Assembly (NCBI GenBank): GCA_964057225.1
Contig: OZ059894.1
Location: forward strand, 9,672,001 to 9,736,000
Length of the DNA: 64,000 bases
DNA from: Auanema rhodensis
Lineage: Eukaryota > Animalia > Nematoda
Direction of reading: 5' to 3'
Below are positions 209 through 64,000 of this stretch, piece after piece. How positions within the stretch are numbered: the stretch's first letter is position 1; every line of letters starts with the position of its first letter. The position numbers and the translations under genes were made by a program. The notes below the pieces were generated by a model. The model was not told the origin of the DNA and made no database searches. It was given only the letters and a program-made list of their open reading frames with translations.

Positions 209-336
209 CTTTTTGTTTTTGAGCCAACGAATTTCTGGTGTTGGTTCTCCTTGGATTTCTGCTGATAACTTGATCTTTTTTCCTTTAATACAGATTGTGT
301 CTAATGGAGCATTAGTTATTGATGGTTTAATAGCAG
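209..336 (-). CDS. ttn-1: Exon, Ig N-half (last exon in window; gene continues below position 1)
   Basis: [22 protein letters not shown]; AAG|GTATGT donor at 208. Confidence 0.88.
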
Positions 337-3300: not shown

Positions 3301-6300
3301 TCCAATGTAGCTTGATTATCATTTACTTCCATAATAGCTTTTCCCATTTGTGGCCAGACTTCTTGTCCATTCTTATACCAACGTACTCGACGAACTGGCT
3401 TGGATGTTTGACAGGTAAAGACAGTATTTCCTTCGAAAGCAGTGATAACAACATCCTGAGGTCCAACAAGAATACAAGCTTCTTCTTCTGAAAAAATATA
3501 TATTTAAATATTGAAGCGATGACTAAATTATACCTTTAATGAGCACTTTTCCTTCTGTTCTGCTCTTTCCATCGATAGTCTCACATCGATAGTTACCCTT
3601 ATCAGCAGAGGAGGCATTCTTGATGCGAAGAGATCTCTTACATCCTAATGTGAAGAATTCGATTCTATCACTTGGAGCAAGTCTCTTTCCATCCTTGTAC
3701 CAGATAACTACAGCTTCTTCATCTGACAATGTGCAACTAAGTTCGAAATCTCCTCCTTCATTGACTTCAGTCATTTCAGAGAATGATGACTCAAAATGAG
3801 CTCGAACAGCTGAATAAGATTTAAAATTTGAAAAAAATAATAATAAAATGCGATTACTTGAGACTACAATAGTTGCTTCCGATTTGGAATGACCATATTT
3901 ATTTCGGACATGACAGGTGTATGTACCTCCATCGGATTCATCCGTCTTATGAATTGTTAACAAACTGCGATATCCTTCGCTTACAATCTGAAAAATTGAA
4001 CAACGTCAGAATTCATTCATTCTCATTCATTAACAGACCTCAGTATTCTCATCAGCTGGAATCAATTCAACACCATCCTTATACCAAATGTATTCTGGAG
4101 CTGGTTCACCCAGAGCGTGGCATTCTAAGCGAAGCTCACGTTTCTTTGCTACAGTATAATCTTTGATAGCCTTGATGATAGTTGGAGCAACATTAGCTAG
4201 AATATTCAAAATATTCAAAATATCATTTTAGAGAGAAAAAAAACCTGTGACTTTAACAGGAAGAGATTCTTCAGAGTATTCGCCTGTTCCATTCATATTT
4301 CGAGCGGCTACTTTGAAAACGTAGGAAACACCTTCTTTGAGGCCATCAATATGACATTTTGGATTAGTACATTCAACCTAAAAAGAAAAAATTATTTAAT
4401 AAACAATGGAAATTACTAACCTGAATCCAAACAGATGATCCTTCTGACTTGTATTGAACGGTATAGTGTACAGGAAGAACATCAACAACTGGATCCCATT
4501 CCATGGTAACCTTATCAACACCAGTGATTGTTATACGTGGAGTACATGGAATAACAGTTGGTACACCTCCAGATGGTAAAACCGTTAGTGGATGACTGCC
4601 TGGAGAATTAGAAGAACGAAGACCAGCTTCATTTGTTGCTTCAATCTTGAAAACAATTGGAATTTCTGTTTTTAAGTCAGTAACATGGTAACGATCAGTG
4701 AATACAAGCTCATCATTCAACTGAAACAAATGTTTAAGAAAAAGATTGAAACATGTGTATACCTTGATCCAATCGTTATTACCCTCTTTCTTGTATACAT
4801 CATATCCATAGATTGGTGATCCACCATCCATAACAGGCTTATACCATTGAAGGTTACATGAGTTTCCAATTGTATCAACAACTTCAGGTGGACAATTGAT
4901 AATAGGAGAAGAATATGGTGTACCAGTTGTAATCTAAATGTATAAATTAAAGATTCAAGTTTGAAATTTTTTGTTTTAAGTTTAAAAGTTTTTTTTAGTG
5001 ATTTACAGTTTTTTTTATAATCTTACCGGCTTTGTTTCAACAAATTCTCCGATTCCATACTTATTTATAGCAGCAATACGGAATATATAGCATGTATCAA
5101 TATCCAAATCATCAATCGTAGTTGATCTCTTAGCTCCAGATGTTTGAGCAACTTTATGGAATGTACGTCGACCTTGCTCTTTCTTTTCAACCAAATATGC
5201 AGTAATGATTTCTCCTCCATTGTTAGTTGGTGGTTTCCATTCAATTGTCACATTATCGGTTTGAACATCACTGATAGAAATATCAGCAGGAGCATCAGGC
5301 ACATCTATTAAGAATATAATATAATATATTTTATTATTATAACTAATAATATTATATATTTTTAATTTTAAATAAATTATAATAATCAATGTATATAACA
5401 TTGAGCATAAATCTAAATAAAGCTTCAAAACAAATATGCATGAAGCATTAACTATATCATATAAATTTAAAAAAATGTAATGTACATACCTTTTACTACA
5501 ACGTCGAATATTTCCGTTATTTCTCCAAAATCATTCGTCAACTTGAAAATGTATTCTCCAGCATCAGCCTTGGTTACTTGACGCTTACAGAACTTAATAT
5601 GATTATTTGAAACATCAAATTGAGTTCTGATATCTGTATCCAATTGTTTTCCATTCAATGTACATGTAACATTAGGTTCTGGCCGACTTTCAATTGTCAT
5701 ATTGATAGTAAGATTATCATCTCGTTCTACTTCAATTGATTTCTTATCCTTATCCTTTATTACTGGCTTTCCATGAATTTCGACGTGTGTATGTGATTCA
5801 GCTCCATCAGCTACGACAGTGTAACGTCCAGCATCTCCGTATTTAGATTTACGGATAGTAAGTGAGCAATTAGCACCAACAGTGTCTATGGTGTAATGCG
5901 CAGTAATCTCGGAAAGCTCTAATCCATCTTTGAACCATCGGACGCAGTGAGCGGGATGGTTCAGATGAACTGTTAATGTGATATCTTCACCTTCATTGCC
6001 AGAAGTCTTACGAGGAAGTCGTTCCAAGATTACACTAGGTGATTCCTCAACTCGAAGTTTAGACAAAGCTACATGTTCGTTTAACCGAACTTGTACCTCA
6101 GCCCCAGTATCATCAAGTTTACAATGAGAAATATGAAGAATGCGAAGATAGCCAATAGTTTCCGTTCGACATCTAGCACTTTCAGTCGATGGCTTACCCT
6201 TAAAGAACCACTCAACTTCATCGTACTCATTCATCAATTCACAAACAACAGGTACAGTTTCTCCACGAAGAGCAAGAATTTCAGCTAAAGGAACAGATGC

Positions 6301-9300
6301 AAATCCTTCTTGACGATTACGTCTACGAGAAAGAGTTCTAGCTTCGTCAAAGATGGAAACTCCGGATGGTAAATTTGGATCTTCTTCATCATCACTTTCT
6401 TCGACTTCACGTTTTCTTGCAATAGGTCTTCTCTTGATCTTCTTCTTAGGTGTCAATTCTCCGGAAATTTTGCGAGCAGGAAGAGCATCGTCAGATAGAA
6501 GATGTCTGTCACTGATTCTCTCATGATGTACTTCCTCTTCAAGCATATATGGCCGTCTAGGTATGTTGCGATACGCCTCATGATCCGCTGAAGTTTCATG
6601 GTATTTAGCTGTGGTGACAGATGACCCTTCAAAGCTTTCCGTTCGCTCTTTCTTAGCTGTCATTTTCCTGGTTCTTAGTGATGAGCTGACATCAGTAGTA
6701 TCTTGCGTGGTGGGTAGTCTTTTTGATGCGGAACTACGATCAGTGCCAGCATCAGATTCTGACACATCGCTTTTGCTTTCGATGTCAGATTTAAGAATAT
6801 CAGTTTTCTTTTTGATGGTAGTCTTCCTGGTCTTTGTTGGCACGCTGGATGCTTTATCTCCACCTTCTTGTTTGTGCTTAACGCTTTCAGCAGCAGATTT
6901 CTTACTTTTAGTTTTCCTGCTGTCAGAGGTCTCCGATTCAGTTGAAGTTTTCTGTTCCTTTTCATCTTCAGTCTTTTCCTGCGTTAATGATGTTATATCC
7001 GTTTCCTTGATATAATCAGGGTCAACCTTCTCTTTCACTTCCCCTATCTGTTCTTCGCTCTTCTCAGGTTCTGTCTTCTTCTCAATATAAGCCTTCTTTG
7101 GTTCAGCTGCAGCATTCTTTGGTTCAGCTTCAGCCTTCTCTGGTTTAGCTTCAATAGTCTTCTCAGTTTCAGCCTTGCTCTCAGCTACAGTCTCCACTTT
7201 CTTCTTTTTTGGTTTAGTTTCTGACTTTGCTCCAACCTTCTTCTCAGATTCTGTGTGAATGTTTTTATCAGCTTCAGCGGTCTTCTCAGCTTCAGAAGTC
7301 TTCTCAGCTTCAGCCTTCTTTTCAGTTTCAGACTTCTTCTCAACTTCAATCTCCCTTGGTTTAGCTTCAACCTTCTGTTTTGCTCCAGTTTCAGATTCAG
7401 CTTTCTGTTTCTTCTCAAGTTTGCTCTTCTTCTCGAGTTTGGTCTTTTTCTCATCTGCAGACTTCTTCTCAGCTTCAGCCATTTGTTTCTTCTCGAGTTC
7501 GGCCTTCTTCTCTGCATCAGCCTTCTTCTCCACTTTAGCCTCCTTCTCCGTTTCAGCCTTCTGCTTTTTCTCGAGTTCAGCCTTCTTCTCAGCTTCAGCC
7601 TTCTGTTTCTTCTCGAGTTCAGCCTTCTTCTCAGCTTCAGCCTTCTTTTCAGCTTCAGCCTTCTTCTCAGTTTCAGCCTTCTGCTTATTCTCGAGTTCAG
7701 CCTTTTTCTCAGCTTCAGCCTTCTGTTTCTTCTCGAGTTGAGCCTTCTTTTCAGCTTCAGCCTTCTTCTCAGTTTCAGCCTTCTGTTTCTTCTCGAGTTC
7801 AGCCTTCTTCTCAGCTTCAGCCTTCTGTGTCTTCTCGAGTTCAGCCTTCTTCTCAGCTTCAGCCTTCTGTTTCTTCTCGAGTTCAGCCTTCTTCTCAGCT
7901 TCAGTCTTCTGTTTCTTCTCGAGTTCAGCCTTCTTCTCAGCTTCAGCCTTCTGTTTCTTCTCGAGTTCAGCCTTCTTCTCAGCTTCAGCCTTCTGTTTCT
8001 TCTCGAGTTCAGCCTTCTTCTCAGCTTCAGCCTTCTTCTCAGCTTCAGCCTTCTTCTCAGCTTCAGCCTTCTTCTCAGCTTCAGCCTTCTTCTCGAGTTC
8101 AGCCTTCTTCTCAGCTTCAGCCTTCTTCTCAGCTTCAGCCTTCTTCTCAGCTTCAGCCTTCTTCTCAGCTTCAGCCTTCTTCTCAGCTTCAGCCTTTTGT
8201 TTCTTCTCGAGTTCAGCCTTCTTCTCAGCTTCAGCCTTTTTCTCAGCTTCAGCCTTTTGTTTCTTCTCGAGTTCAGCCTTTTGTTTCTTTTCGAGTTCAG
8301 CCTTCTTCTCAGCTTCAGCCTTTTTCTCAGCTTCAGCCTTCTGTTTCTTCTCGAGTTCAGCCTTCTTCTCAGCTTCAGCCTTCTTCTCGAGTTCAGCCTT
8401 CTTCTCAGCTTCAGCCTTCTTCTCGAGTTCAGCCTTCTTTTCAGCTTCAGCCTTCTGTTTCTTCTCGAGTTCAGCCTTCTTCTCAGCTTCAGCCTTCTTC
8501 TCAGCTTCAGCCTTCTTCTCAGCTTCAGCCTTCTTCTCAGCTTCAGCCTTCTGTTTCTTCTCGAGTTCAGCCTTCTTCTCGAGTTCAGCCTTCTTCTCAG
8601 CTTCAGCCTTCTTCTCGAGTTCAGCCTTCTTCTCAGCTTCAGCCTTCTTCTCAGCTTCAGCCTTCTTCTCAGCTTCAGCCTTCTTCTCAGCTTCAGCCTT
8701 CTTCTCAGCTTCAGCCTTCTTCTCGAGTTCAGCCTTCTTCTCAGCTTCAGCCTTCTTCTCAGCTTCAGCCTTCTTCTCAGCTTCAGCCTTTTGTTTCTTC
8801 TCGAGTTCAGCCTTCTTCTCAGCTTCAGCCTTTTTCTCAGCTTCAGCCTTTTGTTTCTTCTCGAGTTCAGCCTTTTGTTTCTTCTCGAGTTCAGCCTTTT
8901 GTTTCTTTTCGAGTTCAGCCTTCTTCTCAGCTTCAGCCTTTTTCTCAGCTTCAGCCTTCTGTTTCTTCTCGAGTTCAGCCTTCTTCTCAGCCTCAGCCTT
9001 CTTCTCAGCCTCAGCCTTCTTCTCAGCTTCTGCTTTCTGTTTTTTCTCGACTTCAGCCTTCTTCTCAGCCTCAGCCTTCTTCTCAGCTTCAGCCTTCTGT
9101 TTCTTCTCGAGTTCAGCCTTCTTTTCAGCTTCAGCCTTCTTCTCAGTTTCAGCCTTCTGCTTATTCTCGAGTTCAGCCTTTTTCTCAGCTTCAGCCTTCT
9201 GTTTCTTCTCGAGTTGAGCCTTCTTCTCAGCTTCAGCCTTTTTCTCAGCTTCAGCCTTCTGTTTCTTCTCGGGTTCAGCCTTCTTCTCGGTCTCAGTTTT

Positions 9301-15300: not shown

Positions 15301-16121
15301 GAAAGATGAACAATGAATAGATAAAGAGAAAAACAGATAGATTGTTAAACATGCAACATGCACAAGACAAGAAAACAGATATTGACGACACATATTTCTT
15401 TGTAAAAATAAAGAAATTCATGACAATATATCCACATATATACTATATATTATACATAAATACATATAGTAGAACGATTGTCACGAGCTCACTTACCCTC
15501 AGATATCAATCGCAACATTAAGTAAACAAACATACCGTCCTCAATATTGATTTCAATCTCAGATACCCCATCATCTGAAGAAGAAATTAATATAACTGTC
15601 TAATAGAAACATGGCAAAATAATGTTTTTTTCTCCAAATTTCAAGATGATGATGACGCAAAATAGAAAACAAGAATAGTCAAGATTGTTTCGCAATAAGA
15701 ACGAACAGAAAGGAAAGAAGAAACGATTTCATGACAAGTATTGCGAGAAAGCAAGAATGTTGAAACTTGAAATATGAAGCTTTTTGGAACAAAATTTTAA
15801 TTTTTTTCACATATTTTAAAGTCTTGACGATATTGTACAAGCTAAAAGTGTTCACGATGATATTGACAAGTGCTTGAACGGTTTTTTTCTCAGCAAAGGG
15901 ACATGAACAAAGGTGAGTTTACAGCACACATGTGCTTCAAGAGAGGTTAAAAATTAAAAAAGAAAAGCAAAAAAAGCATGAGAATAATACAAATTTTTAA
16001 ATAATGAACCTATTTTTGGATAAAAGAACTATGATTTTTCAAAGTAGTCAATGGAGAAAAAAAGTGTGAATGAGAAAAAGAGAGTAAGAAGGATGGAGAG
16101 AGAAAGAGAGAGAGGGAAAGA

Positions 16122-16153
<32 letters not shown>

Positions 16154-55100: not shown

Positions 55101-58100
55101 AGACTCAGCTGAGCTTCAGGTTCATTTGATGGTTCATGAGACTCCTTTGGTTGAGCCTCGTCAGTCTTCTGCGCAGGAATCTCCTCTTGCTTCTCAGTTA
55201 CCTGAGGTTGAGGTTCCTTTGGTGGTTCCGCAGATTCCTTTGGTTGAGCTTCTTCAATCTTCTGTGCAGGAATCTCCTCTTGCTTCTCAGTTACCTGAGG
55301 TTGAGGTTCCTTTGGTGGTTCCGCAGAATCCTTTGGTTGAGCTTCGTCAGTCTTCTGTGCAGGAATCTCTTCTTGCTTCTCAGTTACCTGAGGTTCAGGT
55401 TCCTTTGATGGTTCAGCAGATTCCTTTGGTTGAGCTTCTTCAATCTTCTGCGCAGGAATCTCCTCTTGCTTCTCAGTTACTTGAGGTTGAGGTTCCTTTG
55501 GTGGTTCCGCAGATTCCTTTGGTTGAGCTTTGGCAGTCTTCTGTGCAGGAATCTCTTCTTGCTTCTCAGCTACCAGAGGTTGAGGTTCCTTTGGTTGAGC
55601 TTCTTCAATCTTCTGCGCAGGAATCTCCTCTTGCTTCTCAGTTACCTGAGGTTGAGGTTCCTTTGATGGTTCAGCAGATTCCTTTGGTTGAGCTTTGGCA
55701 GTCTTCTGTGCAGGAATCTCTTCTTGCTTCTCAGCTACCAGAGGTTGAGGTTCCTTTGGTTGAGCTTCTTCAATCTTGTGTGCAGGAGTCTCCGCTGGCT
55801 TTTCAGTTGCCTGAGATTGAGGTTCGTTTGATGGTTCAGCAGATTCCTTTGGTTGAGCTTTGTCAGTCTTCTGAACAGGCATCTCAGCGGGCTTCTCAGC
55901 TACCAGAGGTTGAGGTTCCTTTGGTTGAGCTTCTTTAGTCTTCTGTGCAGGAGTCTCCTCTGGCTTTTCAGCTACCAGAGAATGAGGTTCCTTTGATTGT
56001 TCAGCAGATTTCTGTTGATCTGTTCGATCTTCAGCTCTACTTTGACTCTTCAACCCAAGCTGTTCGAAAACATCAAGAACAAGATCAATTTCCAAACCAC
56101 AACACTCGTCTTCTTTGAAAAATTCCAGACTCAGCTGAGCTTCAGGTTCATTTGATGGTTCATGAGACTCCTTTGGTTGAGCTTCGTCAGTCTTCTGTGC
56201 AGGAGTCTCCTCTGCCTTTTCAGTTGACTGTGGTTGAGGTTCCTTTGATGGTTCAGCAGAATCCTTTGGTTGAGCTTCGTCAGTCTTCTGTGCAGGAATC
56301 TCCGCTGGCTTCTCAGTTACCTGAGGTTGAAGTTCCTTCGATGGTTCAACAGAATCCTTTGGTTGAGCTTTGTCAGTCTTCTGTGCAGGAGTCTCCTCTG
56401 CCTTTTCAGTTGACTGTGGTTGAGGTTCCTTTGATGGTTCAGCAGAATCCTTTGGTTGAGCTTCGTCAGTCTTCTGTGCAGGAGTCTCCTCTGGCTTTTC
56501 AGTTGCCTGTGGTTGAGGTTCCTTTGATGGTTCAGCAGAATCCTTTGGTTGAGCTTCTTCAGTCTTCTGTGCAGGAGTCTCCTCTGGTTTTTCAGTTGCC
56601 TGTGGTTGAGGTTCCTTTGATGGTTCAGCAGAATCCTTTGGTTGAGCTTCGTCAGTCTTCTGTGCAGGAGTCTCCTCTGCCTTCTCAGTTACCTGAGGTT
56701 GAGGTTCCTTTGATGGTTCAGCAGATTCCTTTGGTTGAGTTTTGTCAGTCTTCTGAACAGGCATTTCAGCGGGCTTCTCAGTTGCCTGAGGTTGAGGTTC
56801 CTTTGATGGTTCAGCAGATTCCTTTGGTTGAGTTTTGTCAGTCTTCTGTGCAGGAGTCTCCTCTGCCTTTTCAGTTGACTGTGGTTGAGGTTCCTTTGAT
56901 GGTTCAGCAGAATCCTTTGGTTGAGCTTCGTCAGTCTTCTGTGCAGGAGTCTCCTCTGCCTTTTCAGTTGACTGTGGTTGAGGTTCCTTTGATGGTTCAG
57001 CAGATTCCTTTGGTTGAGGTTCTTCGGTCTTCTGTACAAGAATCTCCGCTCGCTTCTCAGTTACCTGAGGTTGAGGTTCCTTTGATGGTTCAGCCGATTC
57101 ATTTGGTTGAGCTTCGTCAGTCTTCTGTGCAGGAGTCTCCGCTGGCTTTTCAGCTAAAAGAGGTTGAGGTTCCTTTGATGGTTCCGCAGATTTCTGTTCA
57201 TCTGTTCGATCTTCAGGTCTACTTTGACTCTTCAACCCAAGCTGTTCGAAAACATCAAGAACAAGATCAATTTCCAAACCACAACACTCCTCTTCTTTGA
57301 AAAATTCCAGACTCAGCTGAGCTTCAGGTTCATTTGATTGTTCAGCAGATTCCTTTGGTTGAGCTTCGTCAGTCTTCTGTGCAGGAGTCTCAACTAGCTC
57401 TTTAGTTGCCTGAGGTTGAGGTTCCTTCGATGGCTCAGCAGATTCCTTTGGTTGATCTTCGTCAGTCTTCTGTGCAGGAGTCTCCACTGGCTTTTCAGTT
57501 GCCTGAGGTTGAGGTTCCTTTGATGGTTCCGCAGATTTCTGTTCATCTGTTCGATCTTCAGCTCTACTTTGACTCTTCAACCCAAGCTGTTCGAAAACAT
57601 CAAGAACAAGATCAATTTCCAAACCACAACACTCCTCTTCTTTGAACAATTCAAGATTAAGCTGAGTTTCCTGTTCCTTTGATGGTTCAGCAGAATCGTT
57701 TGGTTGAGCTTCGGCAGTCTTCTGTGCAAGAGCCTCCGCTGGCTTCTCAGTTGACTGTGGTTGAGGTTCCTTTGATGGCTCAGCAGATTCCTTTGGTTGA
57801 GCTTCTTCAATTTTCTGTGCAGGAATCTCTTCTGGCTTTTCAGCTACCAGAGGTTGAAGTTCCTTTGAAGGTTCAGCAGAATCTTTTGGTTGAGGTTCTT
57901 CGGTCTTCTGTACAAGAATCTCCGCTGGCTTCTCAGTTACCTGAGTTTCCTGTTCCTTTGATGGCTCAGCAGATTCCTTTGGTTGAGCTTCGTCAGTCTT
58001 CTGTGCAGGAGTCTCCTCTGGCTTTTCAGTTGACTGTGGTTGAGGTTCCTTTGATGGTTCAGCAGAATCCTTTGGTTGAGCTTCTTCAGTCTTCTGTGCA

Positions 58101-61100
58101 GGAGTCTCCTCTGGCTTTTCAGTTGCCTGAGGTTGAGGTTCCTTTGAAGGTTCAGCAGAATCTTTTGGTTGAGGTTCTTCGGTCTTCTGTACAAGAATCT
58201 CCGCTGGCTTCTCAGTTACCTGAGTTTCCTGTTCCTTTGATGGCTCAGCAGATTCCTTTGGTTGAGCTTCGTCAGTCTTCTGTGCAGGAGTCTCCACTGG
58301 CGTTTCAGTTGCCTGAGGTTGAGGTTCCTTTGATGGTTCAGCAGTTTCCTTTGGTTGAGCTTCGTCAGTCTTCTGTGCAGGAGTCTCAACTAGCTCTTTA
58401 GTTGCCTGAGGTTGAGGTTCCTTCGATGGCTCAGCAGATTCCTTTGGTTGATCTTCGTCAGTCTTCTGTGCAGGAGTCTCCACTGGCTTTTCAGTTGCCT
58501 GAGGTTGAGGTTCCTTTGATGGTTCAGCAGATTCCTTTGGTTGATCTTCGTCAGTCTTTTGTGCAGGAGTCTCCTCTGGCTTTTCAGTTGACTGTGGTTG
58601 AGGTTCCTTTGATGGTTCAGCAGAATCCTTTGGTTGAGCTTCTTCAGTCTTCAGTGCAAGAGTCACCTGTGGCTTTTCAGTTGCCTGAGGTTGAAGTTCC
58701 TTTGATGGTTCAGCAGATTCCTTTGGTTGAGCTTCGTCAGTCTTCTGTGCAGGAGTCTCCTCTGGCTTTTCAGTTGCCTGAGGTTGAAGTTCTTTTGCTG
58801 GTTCAGCAGAATCCTTTGGTTGAGCTTCGTCAGTCTTCTGTGCAGGAGTCTCCTCTGGCTTTTCAGTTACCTGAGGTTGAAGTTCCTTTGCTGGTTCAGC
58901 AGAATCCTTCGGTTGAGCTTCGTCAGTCTTCTGTGCAGGAGTTTCCTCTGGCTTTTCAGTTGCTCGAGGTTGAGGTTCCTTTGATGGTTCAGCAGATTCC
59001 TTTGGTTGAGCTTCGTCAGTCTTCTGTGCAGGAATCTCTTCTGGCTTTTCAGCTACCAGAGGTTGAAGTTCCTTTGAAGGTTCAGCAGAATCTTTTGGTT
59101 GAGGTTCTTCGGTCTTCTTTACAAGAATCTCCGCTGGCTTCTCATTTGCCTCAGGTTGAGGTTCCTTTGATGGTTCCGCAGATTTCTGTTCATCTGTTCG
59201 ATCTTCAGCTCTACTTTGACTCTTCAACCCAAGCTGTTCGAAAACATCAAGAACAAGATCAATTTCCAAACCACAACACTCCTCTTCTTTGAACAATTCA
59301 AGATTAAGCTGAGTTTCCTGTTCCTTTGATGGCTCAGCAGATTCCTTTGGTTGAGCTTCGTCAGTCTTCTGTGCAGGAGTCTCCTCTGGCTTTTCAGTTA
59401 CCTGAGTTTCCTGTTCCTTTGATGGCTCAGCAGATTCCTTTGGTTGAGCTTCGTCAGTCTTCTGTGCAGGAGTCTCCACTGGCGTTTCAGTTGCCTGAGG
59501 TTGAGGTTCCTTTGATGGTTCAGCAGTTTCCTTTGGTTGAGCTTCGTCAGTATTCTGTACAAGAGTCACCTGTGGCTTTTCAGTTGCCTGAGGTTGAAGT
59601 TCCTTTGCTGGTTCAGCAGAATCCTTCGGTTGAGCTTCGTCAGTCTTCTGTGCAGGAGTCTCCTCTGGCTTTTCAGTTGCCTGAGGTTGAGGTTCCTTTG
59701 ATGGTTCAGCAGATTCCTTTGGTTGATCTTCGTCAGTCTTTTGTGCAGGAGTCTCCTCTGGCTTTTCAGTTGACTGTGGTTGAGGTTCCTTTGATGGTTC
59801 AGCAGAATCCTTTGGTTGAGCTTCTTCAGTCTTCAGTGCAAGAGTCACCTGTGGCTTTTCAGTTGCCTGAGGTTGAAGTTCCTTTGATGGTTCAGCAGAT
59901 TCCTTTGGTTGAGCTTCGTCAGTCTTCTGTGCAGGAGTCTCCTCTGGCTTTTCAGTTGCCTGAGGTTGAGGTTCCTTTGATGGTTCAGCAGATTCCTTTG
60001 GTTGAGCTTCGTCAGTCTTCTGTGCAGAAATCTCCTCTGGCTTTTCAGTTACCTGAGGTTGAAGTTCCTTTGCTGGTTCAGCAGAATCCTTCGGTTGAGC
60101 TTCGTCAGTCTTCTGTGCAGGAGTTTCCTCTGGCTTTTCAGTTGCTCGAGGTTGAGGTTCCTTTGATGGTTCAGCAGATTCCTTTGGTTGAGCTTCGTCA
60201 GTCTTCTGTGCAGGAATCTCTTCTGGCTTTTCAGCTACCAGAGGTTGAAGTTCCTTTGAAGGTTCAGCAGAATCTTTTGGTTGAGGTTCTTCGGTCTTCT
60301 GTACAAGAATCTCCGCTGGCTTCTCATTTGCCTCAGGTTGAGGTTCCTTTGATGGTTCCGCAGATTTCTGTTCATCTGTTCGATCTTCAGCTCTACTTTG
60401 ACTCTTCAACCCAAGCTGTTCGAAAACATCAAGAACAAGATCAATTTCCAAACCACAACACTCCTCTTCTTTGAACAATTCAAGATTAAGCTGAGTTTCC
60501 TGTTCCTTTGATGGCTCAGCAGATTCCTTTGGTTGAGCTTCGTCAGTCTTCTGTGCAGGAGTCTCCTCTGGCTTTTCAGTTGACTGTGGTTGAGGTTCCT
60601 TTGATGGTTCAGCAGAATCCTTTGGTTGAGCTTCGTCAGTCTTCTGTGCAGGAGTCTCCACTGGCTTTTCAGTTGCCTGAGGTTGAGGTTCCTTTGATGG
60701 TTCAGCAGATTCCTTTGGTTGAGCTTCGTCAGTATTCTGTACAAGAGTCACCTGTGGCTTTTCAGTTGCCTGAGGTTGAAGTTCCTTTGCTGGTTCAGCA
60801 GAATCCTTCGGTTGAGCTTCGTCAGTCTTCTGTGCAGGAGTCTCCTCTGGCTTTTCAGTTGCCTGAGGTTGAGGTTCCTTTGATGGTTCAGCAGATTCCT
60901 TTGGTTGATCTTCGTCAGTCTTTTGTGCAGGAGTCTCCTCTGGCTTTTCAGTTGACTGTGGTTGAGGTTCCTTTGATGGTTCAGCAGAATCCTTTGGTTG
61001 AGCTTCTTCAGTCTTCAGTGCAAGAGTCACCTGTGGCTTTTCAGTTGCCTGAGGTTGAAGTTCCTTTGATTGTTCTGCAGAATCCTTTGGTTGAGCTTCG

Positions 61101-64000
61101 TCAGTCTTCTGTGCAGGAGTCTCCTCTGGCTTTTCAGTTGCTCGAGGTTGAGGTTCCTTTGATGGTTCAGCAGATTCCTTTGGTTGAGCTTCGTCAGTCT
61201 TCTGTGCAGAAATCTCTTCTGGCTTTTCAGTTGCCTCAGGTTGAGGTTCCTTTGATGGTTCCGCAGATTTCTGTTCATCTGTTCGATCTTCAGCTCTACT
61301 TTGACTCTTCAACCCAAGCTGTTCGAAAACATCAAGAACAAGATCAATTTGCAAACCACAACACTCCTCTTCTTTGAAAAATTCCAGACTCAGCTGAGCT
61401 TCAGGTTCATTTGATGGTTCATGAGACTCCTCTGGTTGAGCTTCGTCAGTCTTCCGTGCAGGAATCTCCTCTGGCTTCTCAGTTGCCTGAGGTTGAAGTT
61501 CCTTTGATTGTTCTGCAGAATTCTTTGGTTGAGCTTCGTCAGTCTTCTGTGCAGGAGTCTCCTCTGGCTTTTCAGTTGCTCGAGGTTGAGGTTCCTTTGA
61601 TGGTTCAGCAGATTCCTTTGGTTGAGCTTCGTCAGTCTTCTGTGCAGGAATCTCTTCAGGCTTTTCAGCTACCAGAGGTTGAAGTTCCTTTGAAGGTTCA
61701 GCAGAATCTTTTGGTTGAGGTTCTTCGGTCTTCTGTACAAGAATCTCCGCTGGCTTCTCAGTTGCCTCAGGTTGAGGTTCCTTTGATGGTTCCGCAGATT
61801 TCTGTTCATCTGTTCGATCTTCAGCTCTACTTTGACTCTTCAACCCAAGCTGTTCGAAAACATCAAGAACAAGATCAATTTGCAAACCACAACACTCCTC
61901 TTCTTTGAACAATTCAAGATTAAGCTGAGTTTCCTGTTCCTTTGATGGCTCAGCAGATTGATTTTGTTGAGCTTCGTCAGTCTTCTGTGCAGGAGTCTCC
62001 TCTGGCTTTTCAGTTGACTGTGGTTGAGGTTCCTTTGATGGTTCAGCAGAATCCTTTGGTTGAGCTTCTTCAGTCTTCTGTGCAGGAGTCTCCTCTGGCT
62101 TTTCAGTTGCCTGAGGTTGAGGTTCCTTTGAAGGTTCAGCAGAATCTTTTGGTTGAGGTTCTTCGGTCTTCTGTACAAGAATCTCTGCTGGCTTCTCAGT
62201 TACCTGAGTTTCCTGTTCCTTTGATGGCTCAGCAGATTCCTTTGGTTGAGCTTCTTCAGTCTTCTGTGCAGGAGTCTCCTCTGGCTTTTCAGTTGACTGT
62301 GGTTGAGGTTCCTTTGATGGTTCAGCAGAATCCTTTGGTTGAGCTTCTTCAGTCTTCAGTGCAAGAGTCACCTGTGGCTTTTCAGTTGCCTGAGGTTGAA
62401 GTTCCTTTGATGGTTCAGCAGATTCCTTTGGTTGAGCTTCGTCAGTCTTCTGTGCAGGAGTCTCCTCTGGCTTTTCAGCTACCAGAGGTTGAAGTTCCTT
62501 TGAAGGTTCAGCAGAATCTTTTGGTTGAGGTTCTTCGGTCTTCTGTACAAGAATCTCCGCTGGCTTCTCAGTTACCTGAGTTTCCTGTTCCTTTGATGGC
62601 TCAGCAGATTCCTTTGGTTGAGCTTCGTCAGTCTTCTGTGCAGGAGTCTCCTCTGGCTTTTCAGTTGACTGTGGTTGAGGTTCCTTTGATGGTTCAGCAG
62701 AATCCTTTGGTTGAGCTTCTTCAGTCTTCTGTGCAGGAGTCTCCTCTGGCTTTTCAGTTGCCTGAGGTTGAGGTTCCTTTGAAGGTTCAGCAGAATCTTT
62801 TGGTTGAGGTTCTTTGGTCTTCTGTACAAGAATCTCTGCTGGCTTCTCAGTTACCTGAGTTTCCTGTTCCTTTGATGGCTCAGCAGATTCCTTTGGTTGA
62901 GCTTCGTCAGTCTTCTGTGCAGGAGTCTCCTCTGGCTTTTCAGTTGACTGTGGTTGAGGTTCCTTTGATGGTTCAGCAGAATCCTTTGGTTGAGCTTCTT
63001 CAGTCTTCAGTGCAAGAGTCACCTGTGGCTTTTCAGTTGCCTGAGGTTGAAGTTCCTTTGATGGTTCAGCAGATTCCTTTGGTTGAGCTTCGTCAGTCTT
63101 CTGTGCAGGAGTCTCCTCTGGCTTTTCAGCTACCAGAGGTTGAAGTTCCTTTGAAGGTTCAGCAGAATCTTTTGGTTGAGGTTCTTCGGTCTTCTGTACA
63201 AGAATCTCCGCTGGCTTCTCAGTTACCTGAGTTTCCTGTTCCTTTGATGGCTCAGCAGATTCCTTTGGTTGAGCTTCGTCAGTCTTCTGTGCAGGAGTCT
63301 CCTCTGGCTTTTCAGTTGACTGTGGTTGAGGTTCCTTTGATGGTTCAGCAGAATCCTTTGGTTGAGCTTCTTCAGTCTTCTGTGCAGGAGTCTCCTCTGG
63401 CTTTTCAGTTGCCTGAGGTTGAGGTTCCTTTGAAGATTCAGCAGAATCTTTTGGTTGAGGTTCTTTGGTCTTCTGTACAAGAATCTCTGCTGGCTTCTCA
63501 GTTACCTGAGTTTCCTGTTCCTTTGATGGCTCAGCAGATTCCTTTGGTTGAGCTTCGTCAGTCTTCTGTGCAGGAGTCTCCTCTGGCTTTTCAGTTGACT
63601 GTGGTTGAGGTTCCTTTGATGGTTCAGCAGAATCCTTTGGTTGAGCTTCTTCAGTCTTCTGTGCAGGAGTCTCCTCTGGCTTTTCAGTTGCCTGAGGTTG
63701 AGGTTCCTTTGAAGGTTCAGCAGAATCTTTTGGTTGAGGTTCTTCGGTCTTCAGTGCAAGAGTCACCTGTGGCTTTTCAGTTGCCTGAGGTTGAGGTTCC
63801 TTTGATGGTTCAGCAGAATCCTTTGGTTGAGCTTCGGCAGTCTTCTGTGCAAGAGTCTCCGCTGGCTTCTCAGTTGACTGTGGTTGAGGTTCCTTTGATG
63901 GTTCAGCAGAATCCTTTGGTTGAGCTTCGTCAGTCTTCTGTGCAGGAGTCTCCGCTGGCTTTTCAGTTGCATGTGGTTGAGGTTCCTTTGATGGTTCAGC
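209..64000 (-). CDS. ttn-1: Giant titin-like muscle protein gene (nematode TTN-1-like), internal fragment; 35 exons, about 19,787 codons in window, partial at both ends
   Basis: I-set Ig and Fn3 domains interleaved with huge charged/proline-rich tandem repeats. All 34 inter-exon introns are GT-AG with matching phases. Segments '[19 protein letters not shown]' and '[24 protein letters not shown]' resemble C. elegans TTN-1 as I recall it (confirm by BLASTP). Confidence 0.88.
384..561 (-). CDS. ttn-1: Exon, Fn3 C-half
   Basis: [23 protein letters not shown]. Confidence 0.88.
607..731 (-). CDS. ttn-1: Exon, Fn3 N-half
   Basis: [20 protein letters not shown]...SYIVEMKE. Confidence 0.88.
791..901 (-). 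CDS. ttn-1: Exon, Fn3 C-half
   Basis: [23 protein letters not shown]. Confidence 0.9.
954..1136 (-). CDS. ttn-1: Exon, Fn3 N-half
   Basis: [12 protein letters not shown]...SCKLNWKPP...[14 protein letters not shown]. Confidence 0.9.
1185..1332 (-). CDS. ttn-1: Exon, Ig C-half
   Basis: [23 protein letters not shown]. Confidence 0.9.
1587..1717 (-). CDS. ttn-1: Exon, Ig N-half
   Basis: [27 protein letters not shown]. Confidence 0.9.
1766..2131 (-). CDS. ttn-1: Exon, linker + Ig
   Basis: FTWTKN...[14 protein letters not shown]; TTTTCAG / GTGATT junctions. Confidence 0.88.
2180..3487 (-). CDS. ttn-1: Exon, Ig-Ig-Fn3-Fn3 + linker
   Basis: ORF 1743..3347 extended to the TTTTCAG acceptor at 3488; GTAAGA donor at 2179. 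Confidence 0.9.
3534..3809 (-). CDS. ttn-1: Exon, Ig
   Basis: FELSCTLS...IWYKDG...DKGNYRC. Confidence 0.9.
3858..3987 (-). CDS. ttn-1: Exon, Ig C-half
   Basis: [23 protein letters not shown]. Confidence 0.9.
4039..4196 (-). CDS. ttn-1: Exon, Ig N-half
   Basis: [21 protein letters not shown]. Confidence 0.9.
4245..4377 (-). CDS. ttn-1: Exon, Fn3 C-half
   Basis: [24 protein letters not shown]. Confidence 0.9.
4421..4720 (-). CDS. ttn-1: Exon, Fn3 C-half + Fn3 N-half
   Basis: [10 protein letters not shown]...VTMEWDP; TTTCAG / GTTAGT junctions. Confidence 0.9.
4763..4933 (-). CDS. ttn-1: Exon, Fn3 N-half
   Basis: [24 protein letters not shown]; TTTAG / GTATAC junctions. Confidence 0.9.
5027..5304 (-). 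CDS. ttn-1: Exon, Fn3
   Basis: DVPDAP...WKPPTNNGG...[12 protein letters not shown]. Confidence 0.92.
5490..11327 (-). CDS. ttn-1: Large exon (5,838 nt, phase 1-1): AEPKK array, unique insert, AEKK array, linker, three Ig domains
   Basis: ORF 5467..11163 extended to the TTTTCAG acceptor at 11328; AAG|GTATGT donor at 5489. Confidence 0.9.
7264..9315 (-). repeat. Second [14 protein letters not shown] coding array
   Basis: Same units as 23956-42166. Confidence 0.93.
9878..11120 (-). repeat. Coding array of AEAEPKK (21 nt) units plus six 36-nt [12 protein letters not shown] units
   Basis: gatttgatc recurs every 36 nt from about 9992 to 10172. Confidence 0.9.
11455..11611 (-). CDS. ttn-1: Exon, Ig C-half
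   Basis: [29 protein letters not shown]; AAG-type acceptor at 11612; AAG|GTGTGT donor at 11454. Confidence 0.8.
11656..11847 (-). CDS. ttn-1: Exon, Ig N-half
   Basis: [39 protein letters not shown]. Confidence 0.88.
11894..12021 (-). CDS. ttn-1: Exon, Arg/Lys-rich linker
   Basis: ATTCAG acceptor at 12022; GTCTGT donor at 11893; phases fit. Confidence 0.8.
12070..12192 (-). CDS. ttn-1: Exon, Ig end
   Basis: [24 protein letters not shown]; TTTTAG / GTAATA junctions. Confidence 0.88.
12238..12350 (-). CDS. ttn-1: Exon, Ig middle
   Basis: [19 protein letters not shown]; TTTCAG / GTAAAC junctions. Confidence 0.88.
12498..12603 (-). CDS. ttn-1: Exon, Ig start
   Basis: TTTAG acceptor at 12604; GTAAGT donor at 12497; [13 protein letters not shown]. 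Confidence 0.85.
12650..12842 (-). CDS. ttn-1: Exon, Ig C-half
   Basis: ...[24 protein letters not shown]; TTATAG / GTATGA junctions. Confidence 0.85.
12893..13011 (-). CDS. ttn-1: Exon, Ig N-half
   Basis: TTTCAG acceptor at 13012; GTAAGA donor at 12892; LQPCFEEP...[17 protein letters not shown]. Confidence 0.85.
13058..15136 (-). CDS. ttn-1: Exon, low-complexity S/E/K/T region with degenerate 30-35 aa repeats (2,079 nt, phase 1-1)
   Basis: ORF 12975..15179; TTTGCAG acceptor at 15137 gives the needed phase; AAG|GTTTGT donor at 13057. Confidence 0.8.
15171..15191 (-). CDS. Candidate 21-nt micro-exon EWLLSGT (phase 1-1)
   Basis: Perfect TTTTCAG acceptor at 15192 and GTATGT donor at 15170. 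Read-through from this acceptor hits a stop in all three frames. Confidence 0.4.
15350..15362 (-). promoter_or_regulatory. Tandem UGCAUG (RBFOX-family) intronic splicing elements
   Basis: Plus-strand CATGCA at 15350-15355 and 15357-15362 reads TGCATGTTGCATG on the pre-mRNA strand; function inferred. Confidence 0.5.
15536..15574 (-). CDS. ttn-1: 39-nt micro-exon [13 protein letters not shown] (phase 1-1), with an alternative in-frame donor at 15496
   Basis: CTTCAG acceptor at 15575; G|GTATGT donor at 15535; acidic peptide like its neighbours. Confidence 0.6.
16096..16192. repeat. Intronic (GA)n microsatellite with a ~12-nt GAAAGAGAGAGA sub-period
   Basis: Direct reading. Confidence 0.9.
16711..16723 (-). 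promoter_or_regulatory. Composite UGCAUG-C-GUGUG (RBFOX + SUP-12-like) element
   Basis: Reverse complement is TGCATGCGTGTGT, resembling the egl-15 UGCAUGGUGUG element. Confidence 0.45.
16720..17010. promoter_or_regulatory. GC/CpG-rich intronic patch with E-box CAGCTG (16756-16761) and AGACGCAGA (16945-16953); possible internal promoter or enhancer
   Basis: Composition contrasts with the AT-rich introns; motifs are seen directly, function is inferred. Confidence 0.3.
17502..18362 (-). CDS. ttn-1: Exon, Ig-Ig-Fn3 (861 nt, phase 1-1)
   Basis: ORF 17485..18411; TTTTAG acceptor at 18363; G|GTAAAG donor at 17501. Confidence 0.9.
18406..18522 (-). CDS. ttn-1: Exon, acidic linker [12 protein letters not shown]...ESGFSD (117 nt, phase 1-1)
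   Basis: TTTTCAG acceptor at 18523; GTTTTT donor at 18405; open in the required frame (not in the ORF track). Confidence 0.75.
18568..22478 (-). CDS. ttn-1: Exon, Ig + Fn3 + [12 protein letters not shown] repeat array (3,911 nt)
   Basis: TTTCAG acceptor at 22479; Fn3 motifs [17 protein letters not shown]; AAG|GTTGGT donor at 18567. Confidence 0.88.
18600..21690 (-). repeat. Coding array of AEAEPKKK (24 nt) and AEAEKK (18 nt) units
   Basis: Direct reading; includes a ~444-nt internal duplication. Confidence 0.93.
22525..22828 (-). CDS. ttn-1: Exon, Ig domain
   Basis: IELRC...AKWFKNG...GVYHV; ATACAG acceptor at 22829, GTGAGT donor at 22524. Confidence 0.85.
22875..23085 (-). CDS. ttn-1: Exon, acidic linker
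   Basis: ATTCAG acceptor at 23086; AAG|GTAAGA donor at 22874; phase 0 to 1. Confidence 0.75.
23137..23372 (-). CDS. ttn-1: Exon, acidic linker
   Basis: TTATAG acceptor at 23373; CAG|GTAATA donor at 23136; phase 1 to 0. Confidence 0.8.
23441..23662 (-). CDS. ttn-1: Exon, Lys-rich linker (222 nt, phase 1-1)
   Basis: TTTTCAG acceptor at 23663; G|GTATTT donor at 23440. Confidence 0.8.
23713..64000 (-). CDS. ttn-1: Giant repeat exon (at least 40,288 nt, at least 13,429 codons): 31-aa array + CC spacers + AEKK helical array; 5' end outside window
   Basis: ORF 23678..63766 continues in frame to the window edge ([10 protein letters not shown]... at 64000). Donor A|GTAAGC at 23712, phase 1. Confidence 0.85.
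23956..42166 (-). repeat. Coding tandem array of 18-nt (AEAEKK) and 24-nt (AELEKKQK) units, about 6,070 aa
   Basis: Direct reading; frequent 42-nt and 60-nt composite periods. Confidence 0.95.
42382..64000 (-). repeat. Coding tandem array, 93-nt / 31-aa unit (consensus about [31 protein letters not shown]), roughly 220 units, PEVK/PEVT-like
   Basis: Period read directly (e.g. ctgtgcagga at 42401 and 42494); unit count estimated from length. Confidence 0.95.
53189..61927 (-). repeat. Nine dispersed ~132-nt / 44-aa spacer motifs QL(N/S)LE(L/F)FKE(E/D)ECCGL(E/Q)[28 protein letters not shown]
   Basis: cacaacactc core seen near 53281, 55072, 56098, 57280, 57625, 59272, 60454, 61357, 61888. Confidence 0.95.

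What the first reader, a model, noticed from the sequence alone, without database searches (positions are those of the whole stretch)
209..64000. A titin-like fragment that alone is as long as or longer than full-length C. elegans TTN-1
Seen: the phase-consistent 35-exon model sums to 59,361 nt (19,787 codons) and lacks both ends. Known (recalled): the largest C. elegans TTN-1 isoform is about 18,500 aa including its N-terminal region and kinase. Inference: this orthologue is much larger, driven by repeat expansion, and may approach vertebrate titin in size.
Basis: partly seen in the sequence, partly recalled or inferred. Interest (0 to 1): 0.7.

Follow-up and report, generated by a model that had tools for sequence, protein, structure and literature searches.

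The report
Worm titin gene, normal giant size
The window holds about three quarters of this roundworm's titin gene (ttn-1), including one 40.7-kb exon made of two huge repeat "springs"; the whole protein has about 26,400 residues, which matches the long-read-corrected size of C. elegans TTN-1, so it is not an enlarged version.

Summary
A minus-strand gene fills the window.

One exon (64394..23713, 40,682 nt, 13,560 codons, 1.52 MDa) has no stop. It encodes a 7,268-aa Pro/Glu/Gln/Lys-rich array of 31-residue units and a 6,068-aa proline-free Ala/Glu/Lys array that is predicted helical. RNA-like runs show GT..AG splicing from this exon into the downstream exons.

The gene is the ttn-1 orthologue. 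Its 5' part is colinear with the Caenorhabditis nigoni ttn-1 locus, the repeat array has the same "CGLE(I/L)DL" nodes, a twitchin/MLCK-type kinase lies 3', and twitchin itself is on another contig. The whole gene spans about 119 kb and encodes about 26,400 aa (about 2.95 MDa).

The inference "much larger than C. elegans" fails. The 18,562-aa benchmark comes from collapsed repeats in the Sanger reference. Long-read assemblies predict 26,136 aa (PMC6210790), practically the same as here.

Verdict: a real, correctly measured, ordinary TTN-1 orthologue.

The parts
23713..64000 (-). Window part of the giant exon. The full exon is 64394..23713 (40,682 nt, 13,560 codons, about 1.52 MDa). It begins with the second half of an Ig domain just beyond the window.
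   Evidence: No stop in frame. The 3' end at 23713 is fixed by spliced RNA contigs in three runs. The 5' acceptor at 64394 is model-predicted only.
42383..64000 (-). Pro/Glu/Gln/Lys-rich array of 7,268 aa, reaching 64186 just outside the window. The unit is 31 residues (93 nt), about 234 unit equivalents, with consensus [31 protein letters not shown]. At least 9 Cys-Cys hydrophobic nodes ('[13 protein letters not shown]') interrupt it. This is a PEVK/PEVT-like disordered spring.
   Evidence: TRF finds period 93 with 85-92% matches and 0% indels. Composition is P 0.14-0.18 and E 0.2. Unit statistics are and nodes. A similar node motif occurs in C. nigoni.
23972..42175 (-). Proline-free Ala/Glu/Lys array of 6,068 aa (K 0.35, E 0.28, A 0.23). 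It is built from 6- and 8-residue tokens ([20 protein letters not shown]) and is predicted to be continuous alpha-helix.
   Evidence: TRF periods are 18/42/60. AlphaFold2 on 300 aa gives two helices of about 147 residues at mean pLDDT 82.7.
22525..23662 (-). Four RNA-verified small exons (23662-23441, 23372-23137, 23085-22875, 22828-22525) linking the giant exon to the next large exon.
   Evidence: Spliced contigs appear in runs X11, X12 and X14 and not in DNA run X1. GT..AG ends were checked.
18568..22478 (-). Exon of 3,911 nt: one Fn3 domain followed by about 985 aa of A/E/K-type repeats.
   Evidence: Pfam fn3, TRF, model and composition. The acceptor at 22478 is RNA-verified.
17502..18362 (-). 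Ig (I-set) plus Fn3 exon.
   Evidence: Pfam, model.
13058..15136 (-). Exon of 2,079 nt, rich in Ser/Glu/Lys, with no Pfam domain. Probably a disordered linker.
   Evidence: Open frame, no Pfam hit, model.
11455..13011 (-). Seven to eight short Ig-encoding exons.
   Evidence: Ig-like translations, model.
5490..11327 (-). Exon of 5,838 nt: about 1,017 aa of A/E/K-type repeats plus two I-set domains at its end.
   Evidence: Pfam, TRF, model.
209..5304 (-). About 14 exons encoding alternating Ig and Fn3 domains, including a 1,308-nt exon at 2180-3487. The gene continues below position 1.
   Evidence: Pfam I-set/fn3, model. The best colinear relatives are strongylid and Pristionchus titin-like proteins at 32-48% identity.

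Best explanation
The window contains the central three quarters of the ttn-1 (nematode titin) orthologue of a rhabditid (clade V) roundworm, transcribed from the minus strand. The complete gene spans about 119 kb (window coordinates about 84,778 to -34,423). It has about 95-100 exons and encodes about 26,400 residues (about 2.95 MDa). From the N-terminus it has an Ig-rich part of about 5,500 aa, then a single 40.7-kb exon encoding two springs in series, then Ig/Fn3 modules interleaved with more A/E/K repeats. After a 26-kb intron come Ig-Fn3-kinase and a tail of about eight Ig domains. The first spring is a 7,268-aa proline/glutamate-rich array of 31-residue units, comparable to titin PEVK or C. 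elegans PEVT, and it is punctuated by conserved Cys-hydrophobic nodes. The second spring is a 6,068-aa charged A/E/K helix-former, either an ER/K-type single alpha-helix or a coiled coil. Shown here: the open frame, the repeat anatomy, the domains, the splicing at the 3' end of the giant exon, colinearity with Caenorhabditis ttn-1, and a separate twitchin locus. Inferred: that the protein acts as an elastic I-band/dense-body linker as in C. elegans, and that the longest isoform includes every exon. The gene is not enlarged. Its size equals the long-read-corrected C. elegans TTN-1 (26,136 aa). The apparent excess over 18,562 aa only reflects repeat collapse in the old C. elegans reference.
For: Open frame and model. 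RNA splicing of the giant exon to downstream exons. Repeat anatomy. No self-matches at 98.5% identity or above longer than about 1.2 kb inside the arrays. Helical prediction for the A/E/K block. Ig/Fn3/kinase domains. An I-set domain is split in phase 1 across the 26-kb intron: the upstream exon ends '...RLSFSG', a downstream exon matches I-set profile positions 26-53, and the next matches 46-90. Orthology: C. nigoni PIC27588.1 residues 37-2995 map colinearly onto window coordinates 84,540..70,363 at 33-82% identity. In C. nigoni that gene sits a few kb from an EHD/RME-1-type gene and is followed directly by a 16,129-aa model. rme-1 is W06H8.1 and ttn-1 is W06H8.8. The C. nigoni Pro-rich array carries 'FCGLELDL' nodes like the 'CCGLEIDL' nodes here. 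Pristionchus loci have a Pro/Glu-rich array at the same position. Insect twitchin finds its best match on another contig, C4:6.90-6.92 Mb, at 42-47% identity against 27-28% here. C. elegans size correction: PMC6210790, PMC6581061. The 2.2 MDa figure: PMC8523150.
Against: The array lengths rest on one assembly, and no long reads were laid across them. Only the 3' junction of the giant exon is RNA-verified; its 5' acceptor, its interior and the 26-kb intron junction are not. I never obtained the C. elegans TTN-1 sequence itself, because the protein tools cannot return targets longer than about 17,500 aa, so orthology rests on C. nigoni, synteny and architecture. My model misses two Ig exons at -64..-445 and inserts one or two doubtful micro-exons in the big intron, so the total is uncertain by about 300 aa. 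The C. nigoni annotation sums to only 19,338 aa, so TTN-1 length may not be constant across the family.
Confidence: 0.8

Rival explanations
1. One reading: a lineage-specific enlargement in which repeat expansion has made this orthologue much larger than C. elegans TTN-1.
For: The window alone holds about 19,700-19,830 codons, against 18,562 aa annotated for C. elegans. The adjacent C. nigoni gene models sum to 19,338 aa, and the P. pacificus models to at least 14,460 aa.
Against: Long-read C. elegans assemblies predict 26,136 aa, against about 26,400 here. The annotations in other species are fragmentary models that run off the fetched loci and may also come from collapsed arrays.
Confidence: 0.1
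2. The array lengths, and so the headline size, are assembly artefacts: tandem repeats were over- or under-expanded.
For: Tandem arrays over 4 kb were wrong in 63 of 65 cases in the C. elegans Sanger reference (Table 1).
Against: The frame is intact through 40.7 kb, and the 93-nt array has no indels. Units are diverged (83% mean identity to consensus, 90 distinct units among 142), and there are no near-identical multi-kb blocks. The contig is 24.7 Mb long, which implies a long-read assembly.
Confidence: 0.12
3. The 26,400-aa product is only theoretical, and the main proteins are much shorter isoforms that terminate early or skip the giant exon.
For: C. elegans ttn-1 has nine isoforms. An earlier scan note (s1-418507) reports a stop-containing Ig exon about 5 kb upstream of the window that ends short isoforms. 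[quoted passage not shown]
Against: RNA contigs run from inside the A/E/K array across the 3' splice junction into the next four exons in three runs. Repeat-derived RNA contigs are abundant, with the caveat that contig depth is not quantitative. Short isoforms can coexist with the long one and need not replace it.
Confidence: 0.25
4. The locus is two or three adjacent genes (an N-terminal Ig gene, a repeat gene and a kinase gene), not one.
For: The C. nigoni and Pristionchus annotations split the locus into separate models. A 26-kb gap containing an opposite-strand ion-channel ORF precedes the kinase exons.
Against: Frame-consistent splicing links every part in the model with no internal stop. 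The giant exon starts in the middle of an Ig domain. An I-set domain is split in matching phase across the 26-kb gap. C. elegans ttn-1 is curated as one gene.
Confidence: 0.08

Closest known systems
C. elegans TTN-1 (ttn-1, W06H8.8), described by Flaherty et al. 2002 and Forbes et al. 2010
   Same: An Ig-rich N-terminus, giant tandem-repeat regions that include a proline-rich PEVT-type array and charged helix or coiled-coil formers, Ig/Fn3 modules, and a single twitchin-like kinase near the C-terminus followed by Ig domains. Short isoforms exist. Total size is about 26,000 aa once the repeats are assembled correctly (26,136 aa against about 26,400 aa).
   Different: The repeat units differ: 93-nt (31-aa) and 18/24-nt (6/8-aa) units here, against 117-bp, 24-bp and 42-bp satellites reported for C. 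elegans. I could not establish which arrays correspond one to one. A 26-kb intron with a nested opposite-strand channel gene precedes the kinase exons here.
C. nigoni ttn-1 locus (PIC27588.1, 3,209 aa, plus the adjacent 16,129-aa model)
   Same: The N-terminal 3,000 aa are colinear at 33-82% identity. They are followed by Ig exons and then a Pro-rich array interrupted by 'CGLE(I/L)DL' hydrophobic nodes.
   Different: The C. nigoni unit is a short PVEAAPVE(Q/E)K-type repeat. The annotated total is 19,338 aa and is split into two gene models.
Vertebrate titin (I-band PEVK spring)
   Same: A giant Ig/Fn3 protein with a C-terminal autoinhibited-type kinase and a proline/glutamate/lysine-rich spring made of units of about 28-31 residues.
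   Different: I saw no A-band Ig/Fn3 super-repeat and tested no Z-repeats. The 6,068-aa A/E/K helical block has no vertebrate counterpart. Size is about 77% of human titin (recalled figure).
Twitchin / UNC-22 and projectin
   Same: The kinase exon's best solved relatives are the C. elegans and Aplysia twitchin kinases, and both have Ig/Fn3 modules.
   Different: The true twitchin orthologue of this genome lies on contig C4. Twitchin lacks giant low-complexity arrays.

Membership tests
Nematode TTN-1 (titin homologue) | Arrays of I-set Ig and Fn3 domains | tested here: met
   Pfam I-set and fn3 match in 9 of 12 non-repeat open frames scanned, with E-values down to 1e-48.
Nematode TTN-1 (titin homologue) | Very long tandem-repeat regions (a PEVT-type proline-rich array plus charged helix or coiled-coil formers) encoded in giant exons | tested here: met
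   A 7,268-aa array of 31-residue units and a 6,068-aa A/E/K array lie in one 40,682-nt exon.
Nematode TTN-1 (titin homologue) | A single twitchin/MLCK-type kinase near the C-terminus in an Ig-Fn3-kinase-Ig context | tested here: inconclusive
   Kinase exons lie at -30.3 to -31.4 kb and match Pkinase and twitchin kinase structures, with Fn3 before and Ig after. The link to the same transcript is inferred from an Ig domain split in phase across the 26-kb intron. No cDNA is available.
Nematode TTN-1 (titin homologue) | Orthology to C. elegans ttn-1 (colinearity or reciprocal best match) | tested here: met
   The C. nigoni protein encoded next to the rme-1-type gene maps colinearly and best to this locus, and the node motif is shared. 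A direct comparison with the C. elegans protein was not possible because of tool length limits.
Nematode TTN-1 (titin homologue) | Muscle expression and I-band/dense-body localisation | not testable with these tools
   Only the presence of spliced transcripts in three RNA-like runs of unknown tissue could be shown.
Twitchin (UNC-22) | Best match of a bona fide twitchin lands on this locus | tested here: not met
   Anopheles twitchin residues 5600-7000 match C4:6.90-6.92 Mb at 42-47% identity. This locus matches only at 27-28%, or 51% for one kinase exon.
Vertebrate-type titin | A-band Ig/Fn3 super-repeats and a Z-disc to M-band span | not tested
   Only about a dozen Fn3 domains were seen and no super-repeat analysis was done. 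The resemblance is functional (a spring plus a kinase) and does not show orthology.

The most novel reading that the evidence does not exclude
TTN-1 length may be under stabilising selection. This worm and C. elegans, whose titin parts are only about 40-50% identical where they can be compared, both carry about 26,100-26,400 codons, and each has two arrays of about 15-22 kb. The repeat unit sequences and periods, however, have been completely replaced. That would make the spring a length-constrained molecular ruler or compliance element for obliquely striated muscle.
Probability: 0.15. Interest if true: 0.55.

Novelty: new member of a known kind. Interest (0 to 1): 0.3.

Why it matters
The practical value is a correction. 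Nematode titin sizes quoted from the C. elegans reference (18,562 aa, 2.2 MDa) are about 30% too small. Any orthologue from a long-read assembly will therefore look "expanded" unless it is compared with the 26,136-aa long-read estimate.

This locus is a second, independently assembled example of a TTN-1 of about 26,000 aa and about 3 MDa, with a 40.7-kb exon. It shows that the proline-rich array keeps conserved Cys-hydrophobic nodes while its repeat unit turns over.

It also offers a comparison point for asking whether spring length is conserved in nematode muscle. It does not reveal a new kind of protein or mechanism.

Tried and rejected
1. The big representative search with the 586-aa Ig/Fn3 exon was dominated by multi-domain twitchin- and titin-like proteins. 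No target over 8,000 aa was listed, so it could not return C. elegans TTN-1. Only the colinear, few-stretch hits were useful.

2. Two word searches with a 10,000-aa slice of the giant exon, one on the A/E/K region and one on the Pro-rich region, found nothing at E <= 0.001 among 491 and 463 candidates. Low complexity and the 5,500-17,500-aa length window make these blanks uninformative. One search was a region-length slip, which I corrected.

3. Forbes et al. 2010 (PMC2908218) is not held. Searches for the PEVT, DispRep, AAPLE and CEEEI names found nothing, so the C. elegans repeat-region names are recalled only.

4. One AlphaFold job was submitted in the wrong frame and was neither collected nor used.

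5. A megablast self-comparison was uninformative and was replaced by a shifted-identity scan.

6. I considered that the Cys-Cys "nodes" might be in-frame introns. I rejected this because they have no GT..AG consensus and a similar node motif is encoded in C. nigoni.

7. Micro-synteny with rme-1 is not kept. The EHD_N hit lies on the same contig but 2.4 Mb away.

Exons were searched one by one by reference, and lengths and masses were summed exon by exon.

Full report
**Observation.** The gene lies on the minus strand. One reading frame is open from beyond the window's end (64405) down to 23681, which is 13,575 codons, 13,440 of them inside the window. The window is G000:C1:9672001-9736000, on a 24.7-Mb contig of a 181-Mb assembly.

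I fetched 60 kb on each side and wrote a dynamic-programming exon chainer. It uses codon log-odds trained on the non-repeat open frames, GT/AG weight matrices, frame consistency and a linear intron penalty. At two stringencies it gives 30-31 exons and 59,091-59,496 coding nt inside the window (19,697-19,832 codons, 2.20 MDa). No exon has an internal stop in the phase the chain dictates.

Exons were searched singly by reference, and lengths and masses were summed exon by exon.

**Transcript evidence.** Fifteen public runs hold this DNA, and four of them look like RNA. I laid three of those and one DNA run on 21650-24350. The three RNA-like runs carry contigs that skip 23663-23712, 23373-23440, 23086-23136, 22829-22874 and 22479-22524. 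All five are GT..AG on the minus strand once the tool's stated cut ambiguity is allowed for, and none appears in the DNA run. One contig in each run is continuous from inside the A/E/K array (24002 in X11 and X12, 23836 in X14) to the donor at 23713 and on into the next exon.

My model had predicted all five introns before I compared them. The 5' acceptor (64394), the interior of the exon and every other junction remain predictions.

**Anatomy of the giant exon (64394..23713; 40,682 nt; 13,560 codons; 1.52 MDa).**
- It opens with the second half of an Ig domain.
- Next comes a 7,268-aa array of 31-residue units (93 nt, 85-92% matches, no indels). The consensus is [31 protein letters not shown], with P about 0.16, E 0.21, K 0.12 and Q 0.12.
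- This array is interrupted at least nine times by a node of about 45 residues containing '[13 protein letters not shown]'.
- A short unique junction carrying two more 'GLEIDL' motifs follows.
- Then comes a 6,068-aa array with no proline (K 0.35, E 0.28, A 0.23), made of about 600 six-residue and about 285 eight-residue tokens ([20 protein letters not shown]).
- AlphaFold2 on 300 residues of this block predicts two uninterrupted helices of about 147 residues at pLDDT 83. That fits an ER/K-type single alpha-helix or a coiled coil. This was a single-sequence prediction of a low-complexity segment, so it is only supportive.
- Similar A/E/K repeats fill about 985 aa of exon 22478-18568 and about 1,017 aa of exon 11327-5490.
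- Within the arrays, the longest shifted self-matches at 98.5% identity or above are about 1.2 kb. Units average 83% identity to the consensus, with 90 distinct sequences among 142 clean units. That argues against a trivially duplicated or collapsed assembly but does not prove copy number.

**The rest of the gene.**
- Upstream, frame-consistent exons continue to about 84,778. They include Ig-rich exons and a 5,601-nt Ser/Glu-rich exon, about 5,500 codons in all.
- Downstream, Ig exons continue to -445.
- A gap of about 26 kb follows. It holds a plus-strand Ion_trans (potassium-channel-like) open frame.
- After the gap come Ig, Fn3, a protein kinase split over about seven exons, and about eight Ig domains ending near -34,400.
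- The kinase exon's best solved relatives are the C. elegans and Aplysia twitchin kinases, MYLK4, the DAPKs and titin kinase.
- The exon before the gap ends '...RLSFSG' one base into a codon, with a GTACGC donor. The first exon after the gap starts after TTTTTAG, completes that codon, and matches I-set profile positions 26-53. The next exon matches positions 46-90. One Ig domain is thus split in matching phase by the gap, so I take the gap to be an intron of a single gene. This step is inferred.
- The whole gene is about 79.3 kb of coding sequence, about 26,400 residues and about 2.95 MDa, uncertain by about 300 aa. The model skips two weak-site Ig exons and inserts one or two doubtful micro-exons in the big intron.

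**Identity.**
- The best colinear relatives of the Ig/Fn3 exon and of the N-terminal exon are titin-like fragments from strongylids, Pristionchus and Caenorhabditis, at 32-52% identity.
- C. nigoni PIC27588.1 (3,209 aa), searched back against this genome, maps residue 37 to 2995 colinearly onto 84,540..70,363. The only other matches are weak Ig hits elsewhere.
- In C. nigoni that gene lies a few kb from an EHD/RME-1-type gene and is followed directly by a 16,129-aa model. rme-1 is W06H8.1 and ttn-1 is W06H8.8, on the same cosmid. The C. nigoni locus is therefore ttn-1.
- The start of its giant model encodes a Pro-rich PVEAAPVE(Q/E)K array interrupted by nodes containing 'FCGLELDL', which resembles the node motif here.
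- Pristionchus pacificus and P. mayeri also have a Pro/Glu-rich array in the same position, with their own units.
- A real twitchin (Anopheles) finds its orthologue on contig C4 at 42-47% identity and hits this locus only weakly.
- An earlier scan note (s1-418507) had reached the same ttn-1 assignment from an exon 5 kb upstream. I treated it as a lead, and my tests agree with it.
- I could not obtain C. elegans TTN-1 itself. The word search cannot return proteins over 17,500 aa, and the representative library listed none over 8,000 aa.

**Comparison of size.**
- Subirana and Messeguer (PMC6210790) compared that reference with Nanopore (VC2010) and PacBio assemblies. In ttn-1 the 24-bp array grows from 4,465 to 19,240 bp and the 117-bp array from 6,979 to 14,926 bp, which adds 7,574 aa. 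[quoted passage not shown]
- The VC2010 paper also notes assembly-specific coding DNA inside ttn-1 (PMC6581061).
- Against that figure, this gene (about 26,400 aa) is the same size to within about 1%.
- The window fragment beats only the outdated number. The inference of a much larger, repeat-expanded orthologue is not supported.
- At about 77% of human titin (recalled 34,350 aa), it "approaches" vertebrate titin no more than C. elegans TTN-1 does.
- eccDNA circles arising from the repeat exon of C. elegans ttn-1 (PMC5633380) show that such arrays recombine. That fits the complete turnover of unit sequence between lineages.

**Mechanism (inferred from the C. elegans literature and the anatomy).** The protein is most likely an elastic linker of the I-band/dense-body region of obliquely striated muscle. 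Ig/Fn3 modules provide filament binding. The proline-rich array acts as an entropic spring. The A/E/K block acts as a long, stiff but extensible helix, up to about 0.9 µm if it is fully helical at 0.15 nm per residue. The C-terminal kinase would serve as a stretch sensor. Short isoforms probably coexist with the long one.

**Verdict.** This is a new, well-measured member of a known family.

The one mildly novel possibility is that total spring length is conserved (26,136 aa against about 26,400 aa) while the repeat sequences are replaced. That rests on two species, and the 19,338-aa C. nigoni annotation speaks against it, though that annotation may itself be incomplete or collapsed. I give it about 15%.

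Noticed in passing
L008:7285-8031 (+), equal to window coordinates -2715..-1969, below the window's start: A plus-strand open frame of 249 aa matches Pfam Ion_trans (E 1e-33) and Ion_trans_2. It is a potassium-channel-like gene nested, on the opposite strand, in the roughly 26-kb intron that precedes the titin kinase exons.
   Followed up: partly
window 53287-61894 (nine sites) and 42176-42382; L017:about 27,900-28,100: The Cys-Cys hydrophobic nodes ('[13 protein letters not shown]') that punctuate the Pro-rich array resemble nodes in the C. nigoni ttn-1 array ('FCGLELDLLMESSEF'). They look like a conserved, coding feature of nematode titin springs and not introns. Their function is unknown.
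   Followed up: partly
window 26051-41818 (+), 23802-34541 (+), and minus-strand frame 1 at 25504-35640: Open frames of 3,400-5,300 codons occur in the wrong frames and on the wrong strand of the A/E/K array. They are by-products of an 18-nt periodic, stop-poor repeat and are not genes.
   Followed up: no
G000:C4:6,901,000-6,918,800 (+); G000:C3:7,768,000-7,775,500 (-): The twitchin (unc-22) orthologue lies on contig C4. A second Ig-rich giant locus on C3, with an 1,861-aa open frame, may be unc-89 or ketn-1.
   Followed up: no
window 24265 joined to 21650 (run X11): One RNA contig 'goes back 2616' bases, joining the A/E/K array of the giant exon to the A/E/K-like repeats of the next large exon. 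It is most likely a short-read assembly chimera between similar repeats, but a back-splice (circular RNA) is not excluded.
   Followed up: no
window 15137-17501: This intron of about 2.3 kb is far longer than the gene's median of about 50 nt. It contains low-complexity Ser/Leu-type DNA. One model run placed a 39-nt micro-exon at 15536-15574, and another scan note (s1-410038) flags a micro-exon nearby.
   Followed up: no
G000:C1:7,314,791-7,314,871: The only EHD_N (rme-1-type) hit lies on the same contig but 2.4 Mb from ttn-1. In Caenorhabditis the two genes are neighbours, so linkage is kept but micro-synteny is lost.
   Followed up: partly
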